A DNA stretch of 64,000 nucleotides from Bugula neritina. Taxonomy: Eukaryota; Animalia; Bryozoa. Of the stretch, positions 20,653-60,490 are shown one piece after another. Under the pieces are notes generated by a model that was not told where the DNA came from, ran no database searches, and saw only the letters and a program-made list of their open reading frames with translations. The stretch is taken from NCBI GenBank assembly GCA_964035545.1, contig OZ037770.1, positions 12,390,642 to 12,454,641 on the forward strand, read 5' to 3'. The number at the start of each line of letters is the position of its first letter. Positions within the stretch are counted from its first letter, which is position 1. A program made the translations under genes and the position numbers.

Positions 20653-22940
20653 CTAATAACCATGAACTTCAACCTCATGAAGGTTTAAAGCTGTTGTAGC
20701 ATTGAATAGAATCTGAACAAACCGGCCACTGATTGGTTGATCACATGTAGCTAGAGTGTAGTATTGGTTGAGATAACTATCAACATATTTACACAGAACT
20801 TCTCTGTTAGATCCAGTAAACTCTATATCTTCCTCTGCCATAGCAACTGTTACTTCTGCGTTCATTGCTTTCTGACTGTATTCTATTTCTATAAAATTAT
20901 AATTCATCTATGAAACTTTCTTTTAAAAGTCTGAAAGTTTAATCTTTTGATTAACCTTGACTGCATGTGCATTATTTTCAAAAACTGCTCATTTTTAGCT
21001 TGTTTAGATTTTTTGATTATGGCTGGTGCAAAAAATTCTATGCTGATTTTTCACAATTGACTTTGATAAAAGAGTAGAAAAAAATTAGAGCACTTATTCA
21101 ATCCCAGGATCATTAATGAAGCTATATTACTGCTGTTTATATCCAAAGTTTGTGCATATGTGATACACAATATAGTGCAGATATGTTCTACCAATAAGGC
21201 AATCATACTCACCCTTAAATCTGTTGAGAATGTTAACAGCCCAGACACAGTGTACATCTCCCAGGTCTACTCTCCACCATGGTCTAGTCTCTCTTAAACT
21301 ATGTACCATTGATATTCGTTCATCTGCAGTTTCATATAGATACCGTCTACGGCTGCAGCCGCACCAAATGATAATTTCTTGACGGAATATTCCAGAACAG
21401 ATGATAGTTCTGCTAATTTATCTAGAAAGATAAAATTATGAGTTGTTGCTTCAGAACTTTTATTGATTTTATTACAAATTTTTTGATTTTATAAATTTTA
21501 TTACATTCAATTTTTTTATGTCTAAATTTTAAGGCCAGTATTTACATTAAAAACTTTGTAACATGTTTTAATGTCTGTGATATGTAATAAATCAAATAAT
21601 AGATCATTAATCACTTAATAAGGCATTTCCTATAAAACTTGCATTCAAAAACCAAAAGTTGAATCTGAGTTCTTTGCTATAATAAAAACTGAAAATATTA
21701 ATATAATTATTTCTCAACTTAAAATATGATATAAATCAGGGTTGGGATCAAATACATGTGAATGTAATTATTTACAATTACAGGAAAATTTGTCAATCAC
21801 AGTTACAATTATAATTACAGTTAAAAAGTAATGTAATTAATTACAAGTACAATTACATGGCAATGTAATTAATTACAATTGCTAATAATTTTGTTCTCGC
21901 AAGAGATAAATAGAAGTTATGCCATCTAACTTCTAGGGTCCAACTACTAGGGGCAATTTTGACAGTGGTGAACCTTCTTTGTTGTCAAAGGTGATACTGT
22001 ACTACATTGACTTAGTCTGAACTTCTTAGTTAACGCAGTAGGCATGGTAGGAAATATAGGGAATTTTTAAAATTTTAAAGTTTGAAGTAATTGACGTGTA
22101 ATTGTAAAGTAATTGTAAAAATCAATTAAATGCATTACATATGTAATTGATTACCATTACAATTGAAATTACATTTCTATGCATGCATCAATTACAAATT
22201 ACATTTAATTACTTGAAAAAATTAAATAATTACAACCAATTACAATTGCAAATTACAATTACCCCAAACCTGATATAAATATCAATAAAATTGCTCACTT
22301 CTAGCGAGTAATTTAGTGAATCTTTCTCTAACATCTGCTCTGATGTAGAAATCAGAATCATCTCCCTGTCCTTCAGGATACAGATTAGGGTTAACACATG
22401 TTTTAGCAGAGCATTTCTTGGTTAGCAAGTCATATGTGAATCCATTGCATTCTTTATTTTTCAAGCAATGAAAACCACAGTTATAGCTGGTAGAAATCGC
22501 CGTCCCAGAGTCATGTTGTGAAATGTTGGAGAGAGATTCTGGCATGACATAACTCTTGTAGAAGACAGCCTGGTTACCAGATACAGCCAGAGCTGTAAAC
22601 TTTACTAACAGCACTGCAAAAATATTATTTATAAAACAAATTCATTACCAGCTGTTTATTTTAGAAATGTTATATAATTTTTTACAACTATATAAACTGC
22701 CGTGCATATGTCTTGATCAGAATGATAAACTGAAAACTAAAAGCATGCAGGTGTATCAGTTTCTATTCAAACAATTACTTTGTATGCCAACATTTAAGTA
22801 TCCATACATTAATATGTGCATTTTGATTCTTTATTTGTCTAAAATTAAAACCACAAATGATATAAAATACTAGCAGAATGAAATTTGCTTTTAAAAAAGA
22901 TTTGCTTACCAAGTTTGCATGTCCTAAACCTGTCTTGCAT
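20653..22940 (-). pseudogene. PAN/apple + F-type lectin gene copy L1, with a +2 frameshift in exon 3
   Basis: Exons 22910-22940 (MQDRFRTCKL), 22299-22613 (signal peptide + PAN), 21213-21421 (FTLD N-half; 209 nt vs 207 in paralogs, extra AT at ~21334-21338 leads to a premature TAA), 20653-20888 (FTLD C-half). Confidence 0.8.
21737..22272. mobile_element. Non-autonomous hAT-type MITE in L1 intron 2
   Basis: TIRs CAGGGTTGGG / CCCAAACCTG, perfect 8-bp TSD ATATAAAT (21729-21736 and 22273-22280), many AATTAC/GTAATT subterminal repeats. Confidence 0.88.
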
Positions 22941-27719: not shown

Positions 27720-27780
27720 GTAATGCTTTAGTAAAACTATAAGTTTTACTATTGCGAAGGTGTGGGCCATGGTACTCTGT

Positions 27781-27827
27781 TCTGTGCTGATGAGGGGACA
27801 AATCCCGAAACAGCTGCTGTCCACAGA
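27781..27827 (+). ncRNA. Type I hammerhead ribozyme within a ~160-bp insertion (probable Penelope-like element / retrozyme relic)
   Basis: TCTGTG-CTGATGA-GGGG ACAAA TCCC-GAA-ACAG CTG CTGT-C-CACAGA. Complete core CUGAUGA/GAAA, stem I UCUGUG/CACAGA, stem II GGGG/UCCC, stem III ACAG/CUGU, GUC triplet with predicted cleavage after 27821. Confidence 0.88.
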
Positions 27828-29920
27828 TTGAGATATATATAATTATATATAGATTCATTCATTTTGATTAATTTGCTTTACTCAGATATTTAACCACTTC
27901 ATTTTAGGTTGATGTTGCTTGGTTAATTTCCTATCTCAAAATGAAGTGATTGCAATCAATACGGCTTCTTTCAAATTAAAAACACATTTTAAAAGAAATA
28001 AAATATACATCCTTTGTAATAGTTCATTTGGCGTTTCTAGGATAAGTATATTGCAATAAAACAGTCAATAAATTATAAACACATATAAAGGTGAGTTAAC
28101 TATATTTTGATTGTAAACTTCATCATTTGGCTGTTGGAGGTATTGAAATAATGTTCAGAAAATTCATGACATGCAAATTTAGTAAGTGATTTTTATTATT
28201 ATAACTATATATAAATCAGTAAAGAGCATAAAATAAAGTGAATATATTATAAAACCTAGCTATAATACCATGCGTTTTTGTCACTTAAGTATTTTATATG
28301 TATATATTTAATGTCCCTCGGTTACTGAGGTTGTTGTATATAATTATGTTATAGTAAGCTGTGTGCCTATAACACTAAACATGTTTAGAAAATACAAACA
28401 GTCAACAATAAAGACTAAACAGAAAATTAAAAAATTAAGTACTATAGTATAGTTATAGTATAGTGCATATATATTGTTCTACTACAGTTTGTGACATCTT
28501 ATTGATATTTGTGCCTGTGCAGCTGTGATACTATATAAAGCATCATAATATTCTTGTGTAAATAATTTTAGCTACATTAAAAAAGTTATAAATCAAAGAG
28601 AATATAGAGAGATTTTAGACTGTGTGCAAAGCTCCTGAACTTTTCTGTTTAATGCTGTTCCCTGTTCATCTTCTGCCAAATTATAACAATTCTGCATTGA
28701 TAACATTGATTGAATGTTTTCTTTCATATAATTTTAGTTCTGTTGGTACAGCTTGCAGCTCTGGCTGTGTTTGGTTACCAGACTGTCCTTTACAAGAGCT
28801 ATGCCATGCCAGAATCTCTATCCAACATTTCACAACATGACTCTCTGGGACAGCCATTTCTACTCTTTACTGTGGCTTTGATTGTATGAGAAGAGAAGAA
28901 TGCAATGGATTTACATATGATTGGCTAACCAAGAAGTGCTCTGTTAAAACATGTGTTAACCCTAATCTGTATCCTGAAGGAAGGGGAGATGATTCTGATT
29001 TCTACATCAGAGCAGATGTGGGCGAAAGTTTCAGTAAATTACTTGCTGGAAGTGAGCATAATTTACTTACAATAACTTTTTAAATTTATTTTGAAAAGAT
29101 TTTATTTACAAAAATCATTGGTATAAAAGTTTTCATTAATTGCCAAGTTCAGCAATAATCGAACAATTGCTTTTCAAAATTATAATTAAAATTGCTATAA
29201 ATTGCAGCAGAGACGCAACAACAACTATAGTTTTTTCTAATTTCTATCACAACCACAATTATTTATGCTGTAATTCAATGTCAGATTGCCTTAATGATTC
29301 CTTTTTTCAACTTTGCAGATAAGTCAGCAAAGCTTTCTTCTGTTCTTCTTGACCCTATAGAAGGTGCAATACTGTTTGAAGCGGAGAAGGCCGTTGATGG
29401 AATCTATGAACTACCAGAAGAGCGTTTGTCAATGGCGCACAGTGAGTTAGAGAATAGACCATGGTGGAGAGTAGACCTGGGAGGTGTACACTGTGTCTGG
29501 GCTGTTAATATTCTGAACAGATTTGGTAGTAAGTATAAACTTGTCTTGGAAACAAAAATTTTTTTTTTTAATTTTCATTTCTGACATCTGCTTTATATAA
29601 GTACATATAAATAGGTAATTCCCATTATACTCCGCGATAGTAACATAGCTCTCGTTTAGATATTACTCCATTAAGTTGATTTTGTCAAAGTTTTTAACAC
29701 AGTAAACAGTTATAATTCAGACAAACTTTTCAGTGTATAGCATTAGAGATTGTGATCAACTGAATCATATAATATACCACAATTAAGCATGAAGTACGCT
29801 ATTTTATTGATTTAAATTGTTTGAATTCTCTGGAAATTAAATGTTTAACCAAGTCAGTCTGCCTCAGTTGACGATTCTTCTTGCAATTGTAAATTTGCAC
29901 AGTTAGAGTTTTGTGTCAAC

Positions 29921-40622: not shown

Positions 40623-43315
40623 ATGTTCAGAAAATTCATGACATGCAAATTTAGTAAGTTATTTTTAATATTATTTAATAGTTTTGCACGATATACGGTA
40701 TAAATCAGTATATGAGAGTTTCGAAGAGTATACAATAAAGTGAATATATTATAAAACCTACCATGTGTTTTTGTCGTTTAGGTATTTTATGTGTATATAT
40801 TCAATGTCCCTTAATTACTGAGGTTGTTGTATATATATATAGTATAATATATATAATATGCTGTGGGCAATAAACACCATGCAAGCATGTTTAAAAAATA
40901 AAAACAGTCAGCAATTGCGAGTAAATAGAAAATCCAAAATTAAAGTCCTATAGTATAATTATAGTATATAGCACATGTTGTTTTATACTGCAGTTGGTGA
41001 CATCGTATTGATATTTGTGCCTACAGCTGTAATATTATATAAAGCATCATTTTCTTGTGTAAATAATTTTAGTTACATTAAAAGAGTTATAAGTCAAAGA
41101 GAGAGTTCATAGATAGTTTTTTGGACTGTGTGCAAAGCTTCTGCACATTTCTGTTCAATAATGTTCCCTGTTTTCTGTTCTCTGCTTATCTTCTGCAAAA
41201 TTATAACAACTCTGTGATAATAAAATTGATTGAATGCTTTTTTATATACTTTCAGTGGTGTTGGTACAGCTTACAGCTCTGGCTGCATTTGGTTACCAGA
41301 CTGTCCTCTACAAGAGTTATGTCATGCCAGAATTTTTATCCAACATTCCCCAGCATGACTCTGGGACAGCCATCTCTACCAGCTACTGTGGCTTTGATTG
41401 TATGAGAAGAAAAGAATGCAATGGATTCACATATGATTGGCTAACCAAGAAGTGCTCTGTTAAAACATGTGTTAACCCGAATCAGTATTCTGAAGGACAG
41501 GGAGACGATTCTGATTTCTACATCAGAGTAAATGTGGGAGAAAGATTCAGTAAATTACTGGCTAGGCGTAAGCATATTTACTTACAATAACTTTTTTAGT
41601 TTATTTTAAAAAGATTTTATTTATAAAAATCATTGGTATAAAAGTTTCCATTAACTGCCAAATTCAGCAATAATCTAAACAAATGCTTTTCAAAATTGTA
41701 ATTAAAATTGCTATAAAGCAGCAGAGACCTAACAACAACTATAGTTTTTTCTAATTTCTATCACAAGCACAATTATTTATGCTGTAACTCACTGTCAGAT
41801 TGCCTTAATGATTCCGTTTTTCAACTTTACAGATAAGTCAGCAAAGCTGTCTTCTGTTCTTCTTGATGCTATAGAAGGTGCATCTGTGTTTGAAGCGGAG
41901 AAGGCCGTTGATGGAATCTATGAACTACCAGAAGATGTTTTGTCGATGGTGCACAGCAAATCAGAGACCAGACCATGGTGGAGAGTAGACCTGGGAGATG
42001 TACACTGTGTCTGGGCTGTCAACATTTTGAACAGATATGGTAATAAGTAAACTTGTCTTGGAAACAAAAATATGTTTTATAATTTTATAGTTGTTGACAT
42101 CTGCTTGCGGCTTTATAAGTACATATTGTAATAGTACGGTAACCCATACTCTGCGATAGTAACATAGCCCCAGTTTAAATATTACTTCAAGTTGATTTTA
42201 ACACAATAAACAATAATCAGTCAAACAAACTTCTTTAAAGATTGGGATCAACTAAAGAATATATACCACAAAGCATGAAGTAAGCGATTTTACTAATTTA
42301 AATGGCTTAAAATCTTTGGAAATATGTTCAATCAAGTTAGTCTGCCTAAGCTATAAACTATTCGTCTTGCACTTGCAAATCCACACCGTTTGGATTTTGT
42401 CCCATCTGTGGTGTATATAAGGGTTAGAGGGCTGGTCTAGTGAAACACAGGGTCACTGCAGTAGTAGGGTTCAAACACCGAGTGTGATGTTAGGAAGAGC
42501 ATCCAGTCATAATAGTTCTTGTGCTACATTTAAACACGACACTTAAAATACTATTTTTTCAGGGCTTCTCATGCACACGTGTAGCGACTGTAAACTTGCA
42601 CGTGTTTTCCAAGTTCTGGTATATGTTGTTCCAAAAGCTAGATCTACGAATACTCCAACAATTACAGTTATAATTCATTAAAACTATGTAATAGTTAGTC
42701 AGTAAACTTAATGAAAAAGTGTTTTAATTTTCATCTTCCGCACAATGCGCCACTATACGATGCAGTTTTCCATGTATTCAACCACGCAGTCAGGCTTTGT
42801 TAGACTTTAATGAGGGCTAATGTTATAATTGCTATAAGTTTAAATTTGTTCATGTTTATTTTCAATGCTCAAATGTAGCTTATATGAACGCAATTGTAAG
42901 CGCTTTATCATGTTTCTACTAATCATACAAATAAAATACGTCTATAAAAATCAGATCTTGCGAAGTTCTTGCGTGAGATATTTTGTTGTGGTTTTAGGTG
43001 TATTTAGACAAACTTTGCATTGCAAATCTTTTTAGCAAATGAATGAAGAAAGCTTAGTATAAAAATTATCTTTTTTTAGAATCTGGATACGGTCAGAAAT
43101 CAATCAACACAGAAGTAACAGTGGCTATGGTAGAGGAAGATATAGAGTTTACTGGATCTAACAGAGAAGTTCTGTGTAAATATGTTGATGGTTATCTCAA
43201 CAGATACTACACTCTGATTACATGTGATCAACCAATCAGTGGCCGCTTTGTTCAGATTCTGTTTAATGCTACAACTTGGTTAAATCTTTGCGAAATAGAG
43301 GTTCATGGTTATTAG
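40623..43315 (+). CDS. PAN/apple + F-type lectin gene copy L4 (segmental duplicate of L2), probably intact
   Basis: Exons 40623-40653, 41256-41567, 41833-42039, 43080-43315. The donor homologous to L2 a|gtaagt reads a|ataagt, but an in-phase g|gtaata lies 3 nt upstream. Confidence 0.8.
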
Positions 43316-44281
43316 GAGCTTTTGAGGTCGTCACTGCACGCTATATATATGTTAGAATTATTAGTCTACTGTGCTTGGTTGTGTATATGTATGCAGCCCA
43401 ATTATTAATTAAACAAACGCAAGTCTTTCTAACACCCATACTAAGGACTTTCAACGATTTTCTGGTTTCAGCTGCATGCTGAATAAAATAATTATAACTT
43501 ATAAAGCTATTCATTGTACGTTATGAGTTGTGTGTAGTCAACATTATATGTTAGTTGTTGTTTAACAGGTATGTATTTTGGTGCACAAATGCTAACCTGA
43601 AGTAAAGTTAACTATAATAATGTATTATAAATTTTATATTAAATAATAAATGTTCTCTTTCACCTGCTGCAAGTGGTTCTTATTAGCATAACCATGTTTT
43701 ATATGCATCAAACAGTTCAATTAATGTCATTATATTTCCTAATAATTTTAATCAGCTATTGAAACACCTTAATTATATGCTTCATAAAAAGGCTATACAA
43801 TATTCAATCTGCTAAAAAAACGTCTTGCTTGATGCAAACAAAAAGTAATTTTACTTATTTGGTTAAAGAGCATATTATATGACACAAAATGTTTTTGCTA
43901 TTTAAATATAGCCATTTATATATTATATTATACAACAATATTTATATTATATTACATAATCTAGTAGATACTTTCAATTTATTTTAATTGTTGTTTACAA
44001 AAACTAAACACTGAGCTATTAAGGCTGACTAAAACTTGCACCATTTATCCAACAGAAATATGACATGAACATAGTCTAATTGGTGTATGCAGCACTACGT
44101 TTCTACTGCCTTGTGAATGAATGCTCTGCGGATGAACTAATGATTGTGCCTTCAAACATTAAATAAAAACCTATTGCATAATAATCAATAAATAATTAGC
44201 CTTTCTATGATTATATCGCCACTGCTTTCACAAGAAGGTCAATAACGCACTATGTGCTATATATATATATACTCTTTCTCT

Positions 44282-44544
44282 ATTCACACTTAGCCGCATG
44301 CACCGTAGGCGGTAACGAAAATTGTCAGCCAATTTTACAAATGTCAGAGCTTCCTGTACGGCACTTCCGTATTTTGGGACCAAGCACTAACAAACAGGAA
44401 GACTTCGCATCAATTTATTGAATATAAATGTCTAATGAAGTGTCATAGATCGTACCCAATAGCGCACTTGAAGAACTGCAGCCCGGACACATCAAAATTG
44501 GCTGATATTTTACGTTATGGCCTACAGTGGGGCAAAGTGTAAAT
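44282..44544. mobile_element. MITE-like element with ~50-bp imperfect terminal inverted repeats
   Basis: Left acacttagccgca..caccgtaggcggtaacgaaaattgtcagccaatttt vs reverse complement of right acactttgccccactgtaggccataacgtaaaatatcagccaatttt. Confidence 0.75.
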
Positions 44545-45271
44545 GATGGGTATAAGAGTTTGCATTCTCTAATTGCCAATAGCTAGCTCAAGCATATACA
44601 TGCTAGCAGATAATCCAAATGGTTGCAGAGTGTAGTGTTTTTCTACAACCAATCACATTGATCCAATTGGCTAATAGATAAATAAACCTTACTATAATCC
44701 ATTTATTACATGTGATTATTTTATGACTCCAGGTTCAGTAAAGTTCCATGTTTATATTTATCATTAAATCAATTAAACTGCACTTAGAAAGTTTCTACAA
44801 AATACTTCTATGTATATGCTTTGTTTTTTTTAGAATGTTATTTTCATCTATACTTGATAATCCACAACGTCTATTTATGGCACAGTTTATTGAAAATACA
44901 AATTAATACTACATTTTATGGTGTATTGTTCAGTCACATAACAATAATAAACACAACAATATATGTATACAAAGAAATAGGAATACATTAAAATTGTCAA
45001 AATAACTACTAAATTTCTTTTTCAAACTGCATTTCAATATTACAGATAATATTTGACTGAGGAACATGAGTTGCAAAAAGTACATGTGACGACGTATGTT
45101 TATTTGAGAGGGTTTCTTTTTTAGAATATCAGTGTACATAATACGACTGAATAAAAAATTATACCTACAAATTAAGGAATGAATACGATGACCATTCTTT
45201 TTGCGAACTTTAAAAGTGCACAAATACAATTGCCTTTTAAATATATTGGCGGAGTAAACAGGAACGGTTTT

Positions 45272-48200
45272 TTATTTCCATAGCAACAGAGCCAAAGTTT
45301 GTTGTCTAATAACCTTGAACTTAATTTCATAAAGGTTTATAGTTGTTTCAGCATTAAACAGAATCTGAACAAAGCGGCCACTGATTGGTTGATCACATGT
45401 AATCAGAGTGTAGTATCTGTTGAGATAACCATCAACATATTTACACAGAACTTCTCTGTTAGATCCAGTAAACTCTATATCTTCCTCTACCATAGCAACT
45501 GTTACTTCTGCGTTGACGGATCTTTTAGCATATATTACTCCTAAAGCATAATTTATGCAAGTTAATTTTTTTTCATATGCAAATAATATTTTGGCATTAC
45601 ATGAAACACAAATATGATTATAGTATAAATCTAGTGTAAGAATCATTATTAAGTAATTATAAATTAAGCAATTTTATACCAGTCAGACGGTTTGGCTTAC
45701 TCGTAAATCTGTTGAGAATGTTGACAGCCCAGACACAGTGTACATCTCCCAGGTTTACTCTCCACCATGGTCTACTTTCTCTTCTACTGCTTGCTAGTGA
45801 CGCAAAGGGATCTGATGGCTCATAGATGCCATCAACAGCCATGGATGCTTGGAACGAGAGAGTTTCTTTTGAATTCTTATATTCAGAGGACAGTTGCGCT
45901 GGTTTATCTGTAGATTAATAACCAACAACATGAGCTACATGTAGCTAAAAGTATCTTTGTTGATTTAGTATTATATAGGTGTTATAGAGCTATAGGGAGC
46001 AGACTCTGTTTATACTGGTTAAAGCTTGAAACTAGTGAACTACAAGGTAAGGGGTTAGAGTTCAACCACAAGTCAATGGCTCAGTCCAATGCCTGTGGCG
46101 ATATATGAAGAGGGTCACCTATAGTGGTAATTGTAAGTACCTTTGCTGATTTTAGTGTTATAGATATTATCATAAAACCTTGGAGCACAGCTTTGGGCAG
46201 CTGATGAGGGTACAGGCCTACTGAAATAAGTACGGTGGTTTGAAAGACGTGAGTGATGTTAGGAACGGCATAAACTCATATTTGTTCCTGTCTCACGTTA
46301 CAGACATGTTAGTAACCTAATTTCAAAAAGTTCTTAGCATCAGGGCCTCTTACAGTGATGGTGATATATAAAAACACACACATCATAGATTGTATGAGAA
46401 CCGATAGTTTTTTGAAGATCAAATCTATATTCTTAGTTTTACATGTTGACAAGGATTCTTCTAAGTATTACAGCAACTGTAGAGTTTACTGCGGAAATAT
46501 ACAGCTTTTAAATCAGGTTCAAATAAATAAGTATGCTCACTTCTAGCCAGTAAGTTGCTGAATCTTTCTCCAACATCTGCTCTGATGTAGAAATCAGAAT
46601 CATCTCCCCTTCCTTCAGAATACAGATTAGGGTTAACACATGTTTTAACAGAGCACTTCTTGGTTAGCCTATCATATGTGAATCCATTGCATTCTTCTCT
46701 TCTCATACAATCAAAGCCACAGTAGCTGGTAGAGATGGCTGTCCCAGAGTCATGCTGGGGAATGTTGGATAGAAATTCTGGCATGACATAACTCTTGTAG
46801 AGGACAGTCTGGTAACCAAATACTGCCAGAGCTGTGAGCTCTACCAACACCACTGCAAAAAATAACATGGAACATAAAAGCAATTCTCAAATTGTTAGAG
46901 GTTTATAGTTACATGCAATTATTTTATAGATGATATAAATTAATTATATATATACTTTAATATAAGCTCAGCGTCTAAAATTGAGAGTGTACAGATCACA
47001 TCAATAAAACTGTGGCTTAATTGTATATTGTGTCCATACTAGAATATTGTTATTGAACAAACTGCTATAAATTGTTTACATCCACAACACAGCAAATTGA
47101 TTTGTTTAATTATTTATTCTAAATTAATTTATTTTAGTGACACATGCCACGTTGTGCTACAAAGTGATTGCATGAGGTTGTTACACATTGTGAAGCGTGA
47201 TAAATATATTTCTTCTATTTTCTGTATTTTGTGTTTTGATTTATAAAGAACTTGGTCATACCAATTTTTAATAAATATACACTCATTAGGGGTAACGGGG
47301 GGGGGGGGGGGGGGCACAACGGTCATAGGGGTACAAAAAGCCAGGCAAATTGTGAGAGAACTTATTGACTTAAAGTTGTGATTTTTTTTTCATGAAAAAG
47401 TATTGACATAAACATTCAGCCATTGTAGTTTCAACACTTGCAGAACATACGCATTGAAAAGGCGAGTAAAAAACTGTTTTTACCTACTTTTTGTAAAATT
47501 TTTAAGATGTCGTTAAAGCTTTATAACTTTTTACACTCAAAGGCAACAAGCCTACATTTTACTAATATTGTTGCCATTGCTTGTCTCTACATTGCTTAAT
47601 TATTATAACAGCAAACTCTAAAATAAATTTTCCTTGAGGCACATTTATGTTCAATTTGGCCATCCGGGGCACAATGGGCCACGCTGACCGGGGCACAATG
47701 GACCACCTGATTATTGTACCCTGGTCACTGTTATTAGTCTGTTTGCCTAAAAAGTTGGTTGAAATGTTACTAAAATCTATAGATATAGCCATTTCTGACC
47801 TTTTTGTAAAATGTCAAAGACATCATGGTGAGAAATTGTTTAAACTAATGTCGGAGTCTGATATTGGACGCTATACGAGTTCCAATATTCGGGCCTCGAC
47901 TTTCGGACAGGATCAGTGTTTGAACTTTTCCCTGTGTATAAGGAGATGAGCTCACAGGGTAGAGTCAGTCTATATTACTGGAGCTCGCCAGATAAAGACC
48001 ACTTTTACTCGCTACTTATAGAGCAATAAAGGTTTCTACACTCAAGTTCACTACCACATCTTGTTTCTTCTATACTGGAGTTATGCTCCCTACTTAAATT
48101 GCATTCTACCCACAACACCACTACAATATTTTATTGCTTGATAGTAATGCCATCTTATTTGATATAATGACAAATTATAAACCTTTAAAACAGGATATTA

Positions 48201-51401: not shown

Positions 51402-53961
51402 CTAATAACCCTGAACTTCAATTTCATAAAGGTTTATAGTTGTTACAGCATTAAACAGAATCTGGACAAAGCGGCCACTGATTGGTTGATCACATGTAAT
51501 CAGAGTGTAGTATCTGTTAAGATAACCATTAACATATTTACACAGAACTTCTCTGTTAGATCCAGTAAACTCTATATCTTCCTCTACCATTGCCACTGTT
51601 ACTTCTGCGTTGATGGATCTTTGAACATATTCTACTCCTAAAAACATAATTTATACATATGTTACTTCTTTCAAATAGGGTAATGCAAATAATATTTTGG
51701 CATTACATAGAACACAAATATGATTATATAGTATGGATCTAGTGTTAGAATCATTATTAAGTAATTATAAATTAAGCAATTTTATACCAGTCAGACGGTT
51801 TGGCTTACTCGTAAATCTGTTGAGAATGTTGACAGCCCAGACACAGTGTACATCTCCCAGGTTTACTCTCCACCATGGTCTACTTTCTCTTCTACTGTGT
51901 GTTAGTGACGCAAAGGGATCTGATGGCTCATAGATGCCATCAACAGCCATGGATGCTTGGAACGAGAGAGTTTCTTTTGAATTCTTATATTCAGAGGACA
52001 GTTGCGCTGGTTTATCTAGAAAAATATAAATAACAACATGAGTTAGTTAAAAACAGCTTTGTTGATTTAGTATTATATAATTGTTATAGAACTATATAGG
52101 AAGCAGCCTCTATTTATACTGGTTAAAGCTCGAACCTAGTGAACTATACATGCAGGGTAAGGGATTGGAGTTCAACCACAAGTCAGTGGCTCAGTCCAAT
52201 ATGAAGATGGTCATCTGGTCATAATTTTAAGTACTTTTGCTGACTTTAGTTTTATAGATATTGTTATAGAATTTTGGAGCACAGCTTTGGGCAGCTGATG
52301 AGGGTGCAGACCTACTGAAATAGGTTTGGTGGTTTGAAAGACGTGAGTGATGTTAGGAACGGCATAAACTCATATTTGCTCCTGTCTCACGTAACAGACA
52401 TGTCAATAGCTTAATTTCGAAAAGTCTTTAGCATCAGGGTCTCTTACAGTGATAGTGATATATAAAAACACACACATCATAGATTGTATGAAAACCGATA
52501 GTTTTTTGAAGATCAAATCTATATTCTTAGTTTTACATGTTGACAAGGATTCTTCTAAGTATAACAGAAACTGTAGAGTTTGCTGCAGAAATACACAGTT
52601 TATAAATTAGGTTCAAATAAATAAGTATGCTCACTTCTAGCCAGTAAGTTGCTGAATCTTTCTGCAATTCATCTGCCCTGATGTAAAAATCAGAATCATC
52701 TCCCTGTCCTTCGAGATACAGATTAGGGTAAACACATGTTTTAACAGAGCACTTCTTGGTTAGCCAATCATATGTGAATCCATTGCATTCTTCTCTTCTC
52801 ATACAATCAAAGCTACAGTAGCTGGTAGAGGTGGCTGTCCCAGAGTCATGCTGTGAAATGTTGGATAGAGATTCTGGCATGACATAACTCTTGTAGAGGA
52901 CAGTCTGGTAACCAAATACAACCAGAGCTGTGAGCTCTACCAACACCACTGCAAAAAATAACATGGAAAATAAAAGCAATTCTCAAATTGTTAGAGGTTT
53001 AAAGTTACATGCAAATATTTTATAGATGATATAAATTAATTATATATATATACTTTAATATAAGTTCAGTGTCTAAAATTGAGAGTGTACAGATCACACC
53101 AAACTGTGACTTAATTGTATTGTGTCCATACTAGAATATTGTGATTGAACTAACTACTATAAATTGTTTACATCAACCACACAGCAAATTAATCTGTTTA
53201 ATTATTTATTCTAAATTAATTTGTTTTGGTGACACATATGCCACATTGTGCTACAGAGTGATTGCATGAGGTTGTTATACACATTGTGAAGTGTTATGAA
53301 TATATTTCTGCTATTTTCTGCATTTTGTGTTTTGATTTATAAAGAACCTGGTCATACCAATTTTTGATAAATATACACTCATTACTTAATGCAGAATATC
53401 TACATAATATTAGGGGAGTGCATATTTTAGGTGGTTTACATATATAGTCTACTCATAATGCAGCAGGACAGAACAAAATATTATGCTAGCGGGAGTGGGG
53501 AACAAAAGAAATTTTACGATGATAAATTGTTTAAACTAATTTCGCAGTCCGACATTGGATGCTACGAGTTTCGATATTCGGGCCCCGACTTTCGGACAGG
53601 ATCAGGACCAAGAATTTTCTCTATATATAAGGAGGCGAGGTCACAGAGTAGAGTCAGTCTACTACTGGAGCTCGCCAGATAAAAACCAATTTTACTCGCT
53701 ACCTATACAGCAATAAAGATTTCTACACTCAAGTTCACTACCACATCTTGTTTTTTCTATACTGGAGTTATGCTCCCACTTAAATTGCATTCTACCCACA
53801 CAACTACTACAATATATAATTATTGCTTAATAGTAAACTTTTAAAGCAGGATTATAGCAAAATTAGTCATAGACTATTGTAAAATAAAATATTTTTACAT
53901 TTGAAAATATTTATAGAAACTTTAACTTACTAAATCCGAATGTCAGATATTTGCCAGTCAT
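51402..53961 (-). pseudogene. PAN/apple + F-type lectin gene copy L6, with a +2 frameshift at the end of the PAN exon
   Basis: Exons 53931-53961, 52635-52948 (314 nt; gatgAAttgcagaa vs consensus gatgttggagaa at ~52667), 51809-52015, 51402-51637. Confidence 0.8.
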
Positions 53962-56949: not shown

Positions 56950-58779
<1,830 letters not shown>

Positions 58780-60263: not shown

Positions 60264-60490
60264 TCTCAAATTCGTTGAGAATGTTAACAGCCCAGACACA
60301 GTGTACATCTCCCAGGTCTACTCTCCACCATGGTCTATTATAGTCCCGATTTTACTGTGTGCCATTGATGACTGCGTGTCTGATAGTTCATATAACCCAT
60401 TTAATACGAGCTGGCTATCTACTAGCTTCTCTGCCCCCTTAACAGTAATCAGCATCAGCATGCACAGATATGACATCTTTGCTGGTTTAT
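60264..60490 (-). pseudogene. L8: isolated, degenerate F-type lectin exon 3 (L7-like)
   Basis: Splice sites retained and RPWWRVDLGDVHCVWAVNILN intact, but several indels and stops in the 5' two-thirds; no PAN exon, exon 1 or exon 4 nearby. Confidence 0.85.

What the first reader, a model, noticed from the sequence alone, without database searches (positions are those of the whole stretch)
41325..46785. Direct footprints of inter-paralog gene conversion across subfamilies
By introns and flanks, L4 pairs with L2 and L5 pairs with L6. Yet L4 (41331-41350) and L5 (46755-46776) share three derived nucleotides giving PEFLSNIPQ (ttt, ccc), where L2, L6 and the others have PESLS/FNISQ (tct, tca). Conversely, L2 (~28981) and L5 (~46608) share gga-agg-gga (EGRG), while L4, L6 and the rest have gga-cag-gga (EGQG). 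L2 and L7 share tctactctt (STL). Short incongruent tracts confined to exons imply conversion, including between oppositely oriented neighbours.
Basis: partly seen in the sequence, partly recalled or inferred. Interest (0 to 1): 0.8.

Follow-up and report, generated by a model that had tools for sequence, protein, structure and literature searches.

The report
Exon patches swapped between lectin paralogs
Neighbouring copies of a secreted lectin gene in the bryozoan Bugula neritina share small exon patches that contradict their intron-based family tree; ordinary gene conversion between paralogs explains this best, and it is a textbook process, not a new one.

Summary
The intron and flank pairings (L2 with L4, L5 with L6) hold genome-wide. 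The window's seven genes belong to a family with at least 39 copies of the PAN exon, encoding secreted PAN/apple plus F5/8-C-like lectins. The genome matches Bugula neritina tzBugNeri2.1.

The three footprints differ in strength:
- **L4/L5 patch:** three rare shared bases in 17 bp. It beats a no-conversion simulation at p≈0.004-0.02, but the window size was chosen after seeing the data.
- **L2/L5 AGG pair:** within chance when taken alone (p≈0.24).
- **L2/L7 "STL" patch:** not specific to that pair, because 8 of 30 copies carry it. It does show that the sisters L2 and L4 carry two different family-wide haplotypes (p≈0.009).

Broader evidence is stronger. In the conserved exon blocks L4-L5 is the most similar of 346 non-sister pairs, yet it is an ordinary unrelated pair in the variable blocks. 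Sister pairs also lose their extra similarity in the conserved blocks. The AU test and most PHI tests are not significant.

Verdict: interlocus gene conversion, a known process. The scan reported the same process in other PAN-lectin arrays of this genome.

The parts
40623..40653 (+). L4 (my W4) exon 1: start codon plus 10 codons, donor GTAAGT
   Evidence: The same 31-nt exon (MFRKFMTCKF) lies upstream of L2 at 28151-28181.
41256..41567 (+). L4 exon 2 (exon A): end of the signal peptide plus the PAN/apple domain, 312 nt. It holds the three disputed sites.
   Evidence: AG/GT boundaries. Pfam PAN_1 23.8 bits against a cut-off of 21.4. 93.9% identical to L5 and 89.1% to its intron sister L2.
41334..41350 (+). 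L4 copy of the patch shared with L5 (T41334, C41348, C41350). It changes S to F and S to P and removes the N-I-S sequon.
   Evidence: Simulation p=0.004-0.02.
46758..46774 (-). L5 copy of the same patch
41273..41535 (+). Largest possible L4/L5 exchanged segment in exon A. It is bounded by sites that follow the intron tree (41272, 41536). Inside it, all 6 quartet-informative sites contradict the intron tree.
   Evidence: Middle against ends gives Fisher p=0.002.
41373..41389 (+). Dimorphic cassette (ACC AGC T in L4, ACT CTT T in L2 at 28857-28873 and in L7 at 58387-58403)
   Evidence: The sisters L2 and L4 differ at 4-5 of 10 bases, and each 10-mer recurs in other paralogs. p=0.009. 8 of 30 copies carry the L2 type.
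41498..41499 (+). CA in L4 and most copies; AG in L5 (46609-46610) and L2 (28982-28983)
   Evidence: Exclusive to L2 and L5 among 30 copies. Not significant alone.
41833..42039 (+). L4 exon 3 (exon B): first part of the lectin domain, with a hypervariable 5' 125 nt and a conserved 3' part (RPWWRVDL)
   Evidence: Pfam F5_F8_type_C_2 28.5 bits against 27.8. All 45 quartet sites follow the intron tree.
43080..43315 (+). L4 exon 4 (exon C) with stop codon: a core of about 150 nt that is nearly invariant in 27 copies, between two variable patches
   Evidence: L4 and L5 are identical over 43124-43270.
46541..46852 (-). L5 (W5) exon 2 (PAN)
   Evidence: Inverted-repeat arm against 41250-41584, 93%.
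45701..45907 (-). L5 exon 3. It differs from L6 exon 3 (51809-52015) at 3 sites, all nonsynonymous, with 0 synonymous differences in 44 synonymous sites.
   Evidence: P(0)=0.003-0.007 given the noncoding divergence.
45306..45540 (-). L5 exon 4, 235 nt: one base short near 45322, which changes the last residues
   Evidence: Contigs of run X1 carry an extra base there.
28738..29051 (+). L2 (W2) exon 2, 314 nt: a 2-nt CT insertion at about 28841-28846 shifts the frame to an early stop
52635..52948 (-). L6 (W6) exon 2, 314 nt: a 2-nt insertion near its 3' end shifts the frame
58209..58520 (-). L7 (W7) exon 2. Its intron sister is a copy just beyond the window end.

Best explanation
The window holds part of a large family (at least 39 copies of the PAN exon) of four-exon genes for secreted PAN/apple plus F5/8-C-like (atypical F-type) lectins. 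The genome matches Bugula neritina.

The genes arose by whole-gene duplication, and the introns and hypervariable exon patches still record that history. Afterwards the conserved exon blocks were repeatedly overwritten in short stretches by non-allelic (interlocus) gene conversion. These blocks are most of exon 2, the 3' part of exon 3 and the core of exon 4. They are the only stretches long and similar enough (87-97% over 150-310 bp) to pair.

The L4/L5 patch is one such exchange between convergent, inverted neighbours whose PAN exons lie 5 kb apart. The L2-versus-L4 cassette is another, with a donor of the 'CTCTT' type. L5-L6 exon 3 is probably a third.

Shown here: the sequences, the intron pairings, the incongruent sites and their clustering, and the block-wise contrast in divergence. 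Inferred: the mechanism, the direction of transfer, the tract limits and the timing.
For: 1. Intron and flank sisters are L2-L4, L5-L6 and L7-W8, while L4-L5 introns do not align.
2. Quartet-informative sites: exon A has 5 for the intron tree against 6 against it. All 6 lie in 41334-41499, flanked by the 5 congruent sites (Fisher 0.002). Exon B has 45 against 0 (Fisher 1.4e-5).
3. A simulation on the intron-sister tree with fitted site rates gives, for three rare shared bases within 20 bp in any of 40 cross pairs, p=0.004-0.005. The L2/L4 two-haplotype cassette gives p=0.009.
4. The exon A maximum-likelihood tree joins L4 and L5 (75%).
5. Third-position divergence between L4 and L5 is 6/155 in conserved blocks against 38/96 in variable blocks (Fisher 6e-13). 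It is the lowest of 346 non-sister pairs (Bonferroni 0.02).
6. In conserved blocks the sisters L2-L4 and L7-W8 are no closer than random pairs (17th and 34th percentile). They have more third-position differences than scaled-down neutral divergence predicts (P=0.004 and 2e-5). This fits import from other copies and does not fit constraint alone.
7. The assembly is HiFi at 132x, built with hifiasm, QV 53.7, and the methods passages retrieved mention no polishing step. Contigs of run X1 cover the whole stretch and report no other letter at the motif sites.
Against: - The AU test does not reject the intron topology for exon A (delta lnL 15, p=0.18).
- PHI is only borderline.
- The total number of rare homoplasies in exon A is as the no-conversion model expects (13 against 10.0±3.5, p=0.23).
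- The cluster p-value depends on a window chosen after seeing the data, and it weakens to 0.02-0.07 if rates are scaled by 1.5.
- 71 single rare states are shared by non-sister pairs across the family, so recurrent mutation is common here.
- Conserved-block similarity depends only weakly on physical distance (Mantel r=0.31, p=0.03; partial p=0.06). Copies on other chromosomes are nearly as similar as neighbours, which is unexpected if conversion alone keeps the blocks alike.
- L4 carries about 8 private changes inside the candidate tract.
Confidence: 0.7

Rival explanations
1. There was no exchange. The conserved blocks are held by selection at the nucleotide level (for example splicing or mRNA signals). 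The few sites free to vary mutate recurrently, so rare states coincide in unrelated copies by chance. Loss of the N-I-S sequon could have been selected twice.
For: There are 71 non-sister doubleton sites against 13 sister ones. The total homoplasy fits the null. Two of the three L4/L5 states recur singly elsewhere. The AU test is not significant. Distance dependence is weak, and copies on other chromosomes are just as conserved. The L2/L5 change is two adjacent bases, which one tandem mutation can produce.
Against: The three L4/L5 bases cluster in 17 bp, and one of them is a synonymous third-position change. Sister pairs are not closer than random pairs in the conserved blocks and show an excess of third-position differences there. 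The L2 and L4 10-mers each recur intact in other copies.
Confidence: 0.2
2. The mosaic dates from the duplications themselves. Unequal crossing-over between already different copies produced chimeric genes, so the patches are old junctions and not later conversions.
For: The array mixes orientations and has orphan exon fragments, such as an exon-3 piece at 60274-60336. The cassette states are old and widespread.
Against: L2 and L4 are collinear over about 3.5 kb spanning exon A, with no junction. The incongruent sites sit in the middle of exon A with congruent sites on both sides. That needs a double exchange, which is in effect a conversion tract.
Confidence: 0.06
3. Assembly artefact: reads of similar paralogs were mixed, so the shared bases are consensus errors.
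For: L5 exon 4 lacks one base that contigs of run X1 have, so small differences from the assembly do exist. I could not lay raw long reads.
Against: HiFi reads average about 9.7 kb at 132x, assembled with hifiasm, QV 53.7, and the methods passages retrieved mention no polishing step. Each exon lies between unique introns. X1 covers all 30 bins and reports no alternative letter at 41334, 41348, 41350, 46758-46774 or 46609-46610.
Confidence: 0.03

Closest known systems
Interlocus (non-allelic, ectopic) gene conversion and concerted evolution of tandem gene families
   Same: Short non-reciprocal copying between paralogs that needs stretches of high identity. Reported tracts are typically a few hundred bp (mean 250 bp in humans, bioRxiv 10.1101/135152) and occur mostly above 80% identity (PMC3924818). 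It yields exon trees that contradict flank trees and islands of divergence where exchange stops (PMC3728101). All of this matches the pattern here.
   Different: Here the homology is limited to exon blocks of 150-310 bp between unalignable introns. The candidate tracts are short (17 to at most about 260 bp). Similarity falls only weakly with distance.
PAN-C-type lectin and pentraxin-PAN arrays of the same genome
   Same: Follow-up agents reported constant scaffold exons kept alike by conversion, with a variable binding exon. The contrast between conserved and variable blocks is the same here.
   Different: This is a different lectin domain (F5/8-C-like). Those notes are unchecked AI notes and I tested only this family.
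Templated diversification of immune receptor genes by gene conversion from pseudogene donors (chicken immunoglobulin V genes; from my own knowledge)
   Same: Frameshifted copies (L2, L6, L1) sit beside intact ones and share patches with them.
   Different: Every copy has its own exon 1 and full gene structure. There is no single acceptor gene. Nothing here shows somatic change.

Membership tests
Interlocus gene conversion | Donor and acceptor share a stretch of high identity long enough to pair | tested here: met
   Exon A is 312 nt and 87-95% identical among the window copies. The exon C core is identical over 147 nt between L4 and L5.
Interlocus gene conversion | The tract has a different genealogy from its flanks | tested here: inconclusive
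   Quartet sites (6 of 11 against 0 of 45) and the maximum-likelihood tree (L4+L5, 75%) say yes. The AU test does not reject the flank topology (p=0.18).
Interlocus gene conversion | Shared variants are contiguous beyond what mutation alone gives | tested here: met
   Simulation p=0.004-0.02 for L4/L5 and 0.009 for the L2/L4 cassette. A GENECONV-like run gives p=0.003, Bonferroni 0.06. The window size was chosen after seeing the data.
Interlocus gene conversion | Non-reciprocal transfer seen directly (donor unchanged, acceptor changed) or as a polymorphism | not testable with these tools
   Only short contigs of public runs could be laid. No second individual could be resolved at these sites.
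PAN/apple domain (Pfam PF00024) | Score above Pfam's gathering cut-off | tested here: met
   23.8 bits against 21.4 on exon 2 alone. The nearest Atlas clusters are PAN_1.
F5/8 type C / F-type lectin fold | Score above the cut-off, and the His plus two Arg sugar-binding motif of F-type lectins | tested here: inconclusive
   PF22633 scores 28.5 bits against 27.8 on exon 3 alone. PF00754 is below its cut-off. HS..RPWWRVDL is present in L4, but I found no second-Arg region. The joined protein was not searched or folded.
Programmed somatic gene conversion | Sequence differs between germ line and soma, with one acceptor and many donors | not testable with these tools
   No tissue-resolved reads. The gene layout (each copy complete) does not suggest it.

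The most novel reading that the evidence does not exclude
The frameshifted copies (L2, L6, L1) are kept as a donor library, and patches are copied from them into the intact neighbours. This would happen often in the germ line, or even somatically, to diversify a recognition repertoire in a colonial animal that has no known adaptive immunity.
Probability: 0.03. Interest if true: 0.85.

Novelty: new member of a known kind. Interest (0 to 1): 0.3.

Why it matters
The finding gives a documented case of exon-limited concerted evolution in an undescribed, large bryozoan lectin family. It also warns that exon trees of such families do not record duplication history. It does not open a new question, because conversion between tandem and inverted paralogs is well known. 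The more interesting point is the family-wide pattern. Nearly invariant nucleotide blocks, third codon positions included, alternate with patches that diverge at roughly the neutral rate, and this holds in copies on three chromosomes. Conversion alone does not fully explain that pattern, given the weak dependence on distance.

Tried and rejected
- **PHI within single exons:** mostly not significant.
- **AU test on exon A:** not significant.
- **First GENECONV-like runs:** partly an artefact, because clusters of private changes in L7 and L1 lengthen runs for every other pair.
- **First simulation statistic:** dominated by true sisters that I had not flagged, so I discarded it.
- **Site-wise cassette statistic:** not discriminating. 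I replaced it with a haplotype version.
- **Physical distance as a predictor of conserved-block similarity:** weak.
- **Reads:** only short Logan contigs were available. X2, X3 and X5 hold only the conserved exon parts. No RNA run was listed, so neither expression nor long-read support could be checked.
- **Rfam over 27000-48500:** nothing at gathering scores.
- **Protein Atlas on exon 2:** only generic PAN clusters.
- **Large protein searches:** not used, because they were not needed for this claim.
- **Joined protein:** exons were searched one by one by reference. The joined spliced protein was never built for a search or a fold.
Full report
**What is there.** The window is G000:C6:12390642-12454641. 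G000 has 216,009,554 bases in 321 sequences. This matches the published Bugula neritina assembly tzBugNeri2.1: 216.00 Mb, 320 scaffolds plus the mitochondrion, PacBio HiFi at 132x, hifiasm, QV 53.7 (PMC11480708).

The region holds tandem genes with four coding exons:
- a 31-nt first exon with the start codon;
- a 312-nt exon 2, my 'A', encoding the end of the signal peptide and a PAN/apple domain (Pfam 23.8 bits against 21.4);
- an exon 3, 'B', of about 207 nt (F5_F8_type_C_2, 28.5 against 27.8);
- a 236-nt exon 4, 'C'.

I searched the exons one by one by reference. I did not build the joined protein for any search or fold.

Genome-wide there are at least 39 exon-A matches on three chromosomes. 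I aligned 30 of these for exon A and fetched whole-gene DNA for 27.

**The observation.** All three nucleotide patterns are present where stated. L2-L4 share 2.6 kb at 80%, L5-L6 share 2.6 kb at 87%, and L7 pairs with the copy just past the window end. L4 and L5 align only in exons.

Three corrections are needed:
1. Of the three L4/L5 bases only C41348 is exclusive to the pair. T41334 recurs in one other copy and C41350 in two.
2. The TCTACTCTT state is carried by 8 of 30 copies. The best match to L2 is a copy 390 kb away, not L7.
3. L2 carries a 2-nt CT insertion (about 28841-28846) that shifts the frame to an early stop. L6 has a 2-nt insertion near the end of the same exon. L1 has a broken exon 3. 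L5 lacks one base near 45322 in exon 4.

**Is it more than chance?** Among the quartet L2, L4, L5, L6:
- Exon A has 5 sites for the intron tree, 4 for L4+L5 and 2 for L2+L5. All six incongruent sites lie in 41334-41499, between congruent sites at both exon ends (Fisher 0.002).
- Exon B has 45:0:0 and exon C 17:1:3.
- Exon A differs from exon B at p=1.4e-5.

I fitted GTR+G with per-site rates to exon A on a tree constrained to the five intron-defined sister pairs, then simulated from it. Three rare shared states within 20 bp, in any of 40 cross pairs, occurred in 0.4-0.5% of runs. With a 40-bp window this was 1.9%, and with no window 24%. With rates scaled by 1.5 the values were 2.3%, 6.6% and 58%. 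The window was chosen after seeing the data, so a fair value is about 0.01-0.05.

The L2/L5 AGG pair alone is unremarkable: a cluster of two appears in about 24% of runs. Two such clusters together give p=0.03.

Recast as a sister conflict, the STL patch is informative. L2 and L4 differ at 4-5 of 10 bases, and each exact 10-mer recurs in other paralogs (p=0.009).

The standard tests are mixed:
- PHI for exon A is 0.010 or 0.083 with seven copies, not significant with 27, and 0.0007 for exon C at one window size.
- A GENECONV-like run for L4-L5 gives p=0.003 (Bonferroni 0.06) in exon A and 0.0005 (Bonferroni 0.01) in exon C. Clusters of private changes in L7 and L1 inflate these runs.
- The exon A maximum-likelihood tree joins L4 and L5 (75%), yet the AU test does not reject the intron sisters (delta lnL 15, p=0.18).
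- Single rare states shared by non-sisters are common (71 sites against 13 in sisters). Their total in exon A is what the null predicts.

**The wider pattern.** Each exon is a mosaic. In the conserved blocks (exon A nt 39-272, exon B nt 126-206, exon C nt 33-182), diversity at third codon positions is only 0.03-0.27 per 30-nt bin. In the variable patches all three codon positions reach 0.4-0.5.
- Median synonymous difference between non-sisters is 0.50-0.53 in the variable blocks. It is 0.23, 0.31 and 0.14 in the three conserved blocks.
- For L4-L5 it is 0.074 in exon A and 0.030 in the exon C core, against 0.63 in variable exon B.
- At third positions L4-L5 differ at 6/155 against 38/96 (Fisher 6e-13).
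- In the conserved blocks L4-L5 (19/465) is the closest of 346 non-sister pairs. It is as close as the sisters L5-L6 and closer than L4's own sister L2 (35/465). In the variable blocks it sits at the 66th percentile.

Constraint alone would keep sisters closer than non-sisters everywhere. Instead L2-L4 and L7-W8 fall at the 17th and 34th percentile in conserved blocks, against the 0th in variable blocks. Three sister pairs also have more third-position differences in conserved blocks than a scaled-down neutral rate predicts (P=0.004, 2e-5, 3.5e-5). That is the expected result if copies keep importing conserved-block sequence from the family pool.

L5 and L6 also show an identity island. Exon 3 has three differences, all nonsynonymous, and none at 44 synonymous sites, beside introns that are 74-84% identical (P(0)=0.003-0.007).

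One result argues against conversion as the only force. Conserved-block similarity falls only weakly with physical distance (Mantel r=0.31, p=0.03; partial p=0.06). Copies on other chromosomes average 11% divergence against 9% for neighbours. Some nucleotide-level constraint may therefore act as well.

**Artefact check.** HiFi reads average about 9.7 kb, longer than a gene and longer than the 5.4 kb between the two patches. The methods passages I retrieved mention no polishing step. Only short contigs of public runs could be laid. Run X1 covers all 30 bins of 41100-47000, differs from the assembly at scattered noncoding sites, and reports no other letter at the motif sites. X2, X3 and X5 hold only the conserved exon parts and repeats. 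No RNA run was listed.

**Mechanism.** Whole-gene duplicates diverged until only the exon blocks could still pair. Double-strand-break repair then used a paralogous exon as template and copied short stretches. For L4/L5 the stretch is at least 17 bp (41334-41350) and at most about 260 bp (41273-41535). These lengths fall within reported values: a mean of a few hundred bp, mostly above 80% identity (PMC3924818; bioRxiv 10.1101/135152). L4 and L5 are convergent, and their exons form inverted repeats of 335, 210 and 105 nt. The direction of transfer cannot be told. L4 has about eight private changes in the candidate tract, so the event is not very recent or the tract is short.

**Comparison and verdict.** This is interlocus gene conversion in a tandem lectin family, a known process in a family that has not been described. 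Follow-up notes of this scan reached the same reading for PAN-C-type lectin and pentraxin-PAN arrays elsewhere in this genome. I did not rely on them as evidence. Interest is low to moderate.

Noticed in passing
window 28841-28846 (L2), 52640-52675 (L6), L1 exon 3 at about 21219-21420: Three of the seven window copies look like pseudogenes: two have 2-nt insertions in the PAN exon and one has a broken exon 3. Yet they carry very few private substitutions (4-6 in 755 nt for L2 and L6). They are therefore either recently disabled or still being overwritten by intact copies.
   Followed up: partly
window 45322: L5 exon 4 lacks one base compared with every other copy, which changes the conserved C-terminal EIEVxGY. 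Contigs of run X1, and of X2 and X3, show an extra base there. The cause may be an allele, an assembly slip or cross-laid paralog contigs.
   Followed up: partly
window 41343-41351 and 46757-46765: The S-to-P change shared by L4 and L5 removes the N-I-S glycosylation sequon, which almost all other copies keep just after the signal peptide.
   Followed up: no
window 43201-43203: One codon in the invariant exon 4 core is dimorphic across the family. AGA is found in 11 copies and CAA in 16, differing at all three bases. The dimorphism splits the intron sisters at C6:12045302 and C6:12052777.
   Followed up: partly
window 43262-43300; L048 (copy at C6:12476392): The variable 3' patch of exon 4 (TWLNLCE type) is nearly identical in L2, L4 and a copy whose introns pair with L7. 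Another patch type (SLGLHE) is shared by L7, W8 and two copies on chromosome C7.
   Followed up: partly
window 42479-42675 and 46237-46291; also 44252-44448: A very high-copy repeat (summed contig depth 60,000-260,000 in all four runs) sits in L4 intron 3. A 73% related piece sits in L5 intron 2. This is probably a SINE-like element. A second repeat lies between the genes.
   Followed up: no
window 27000-48500: No Rfam family reaches its gathering score here. This includes 27720-27880, where another first-reader note reports a type I hammerhead ribozyme.
   Followed up: partly
window 60274-60336 (-): An orphan fragment of the conserved part of exon 3 (95% to L4) lies between L7 and the next gene, with no exon 2 or exon 4 beside it.
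   Followed up: no
window 41100-47000, runs X2, X3, X5: Three runs labelled as the same organism hold only the conserved exon blocks at 95% or more and none of the introns. They may come from diverged lineages of the B. neritina species complex, which would mean the blocks are conserved between lineages too.
   Followed up: no
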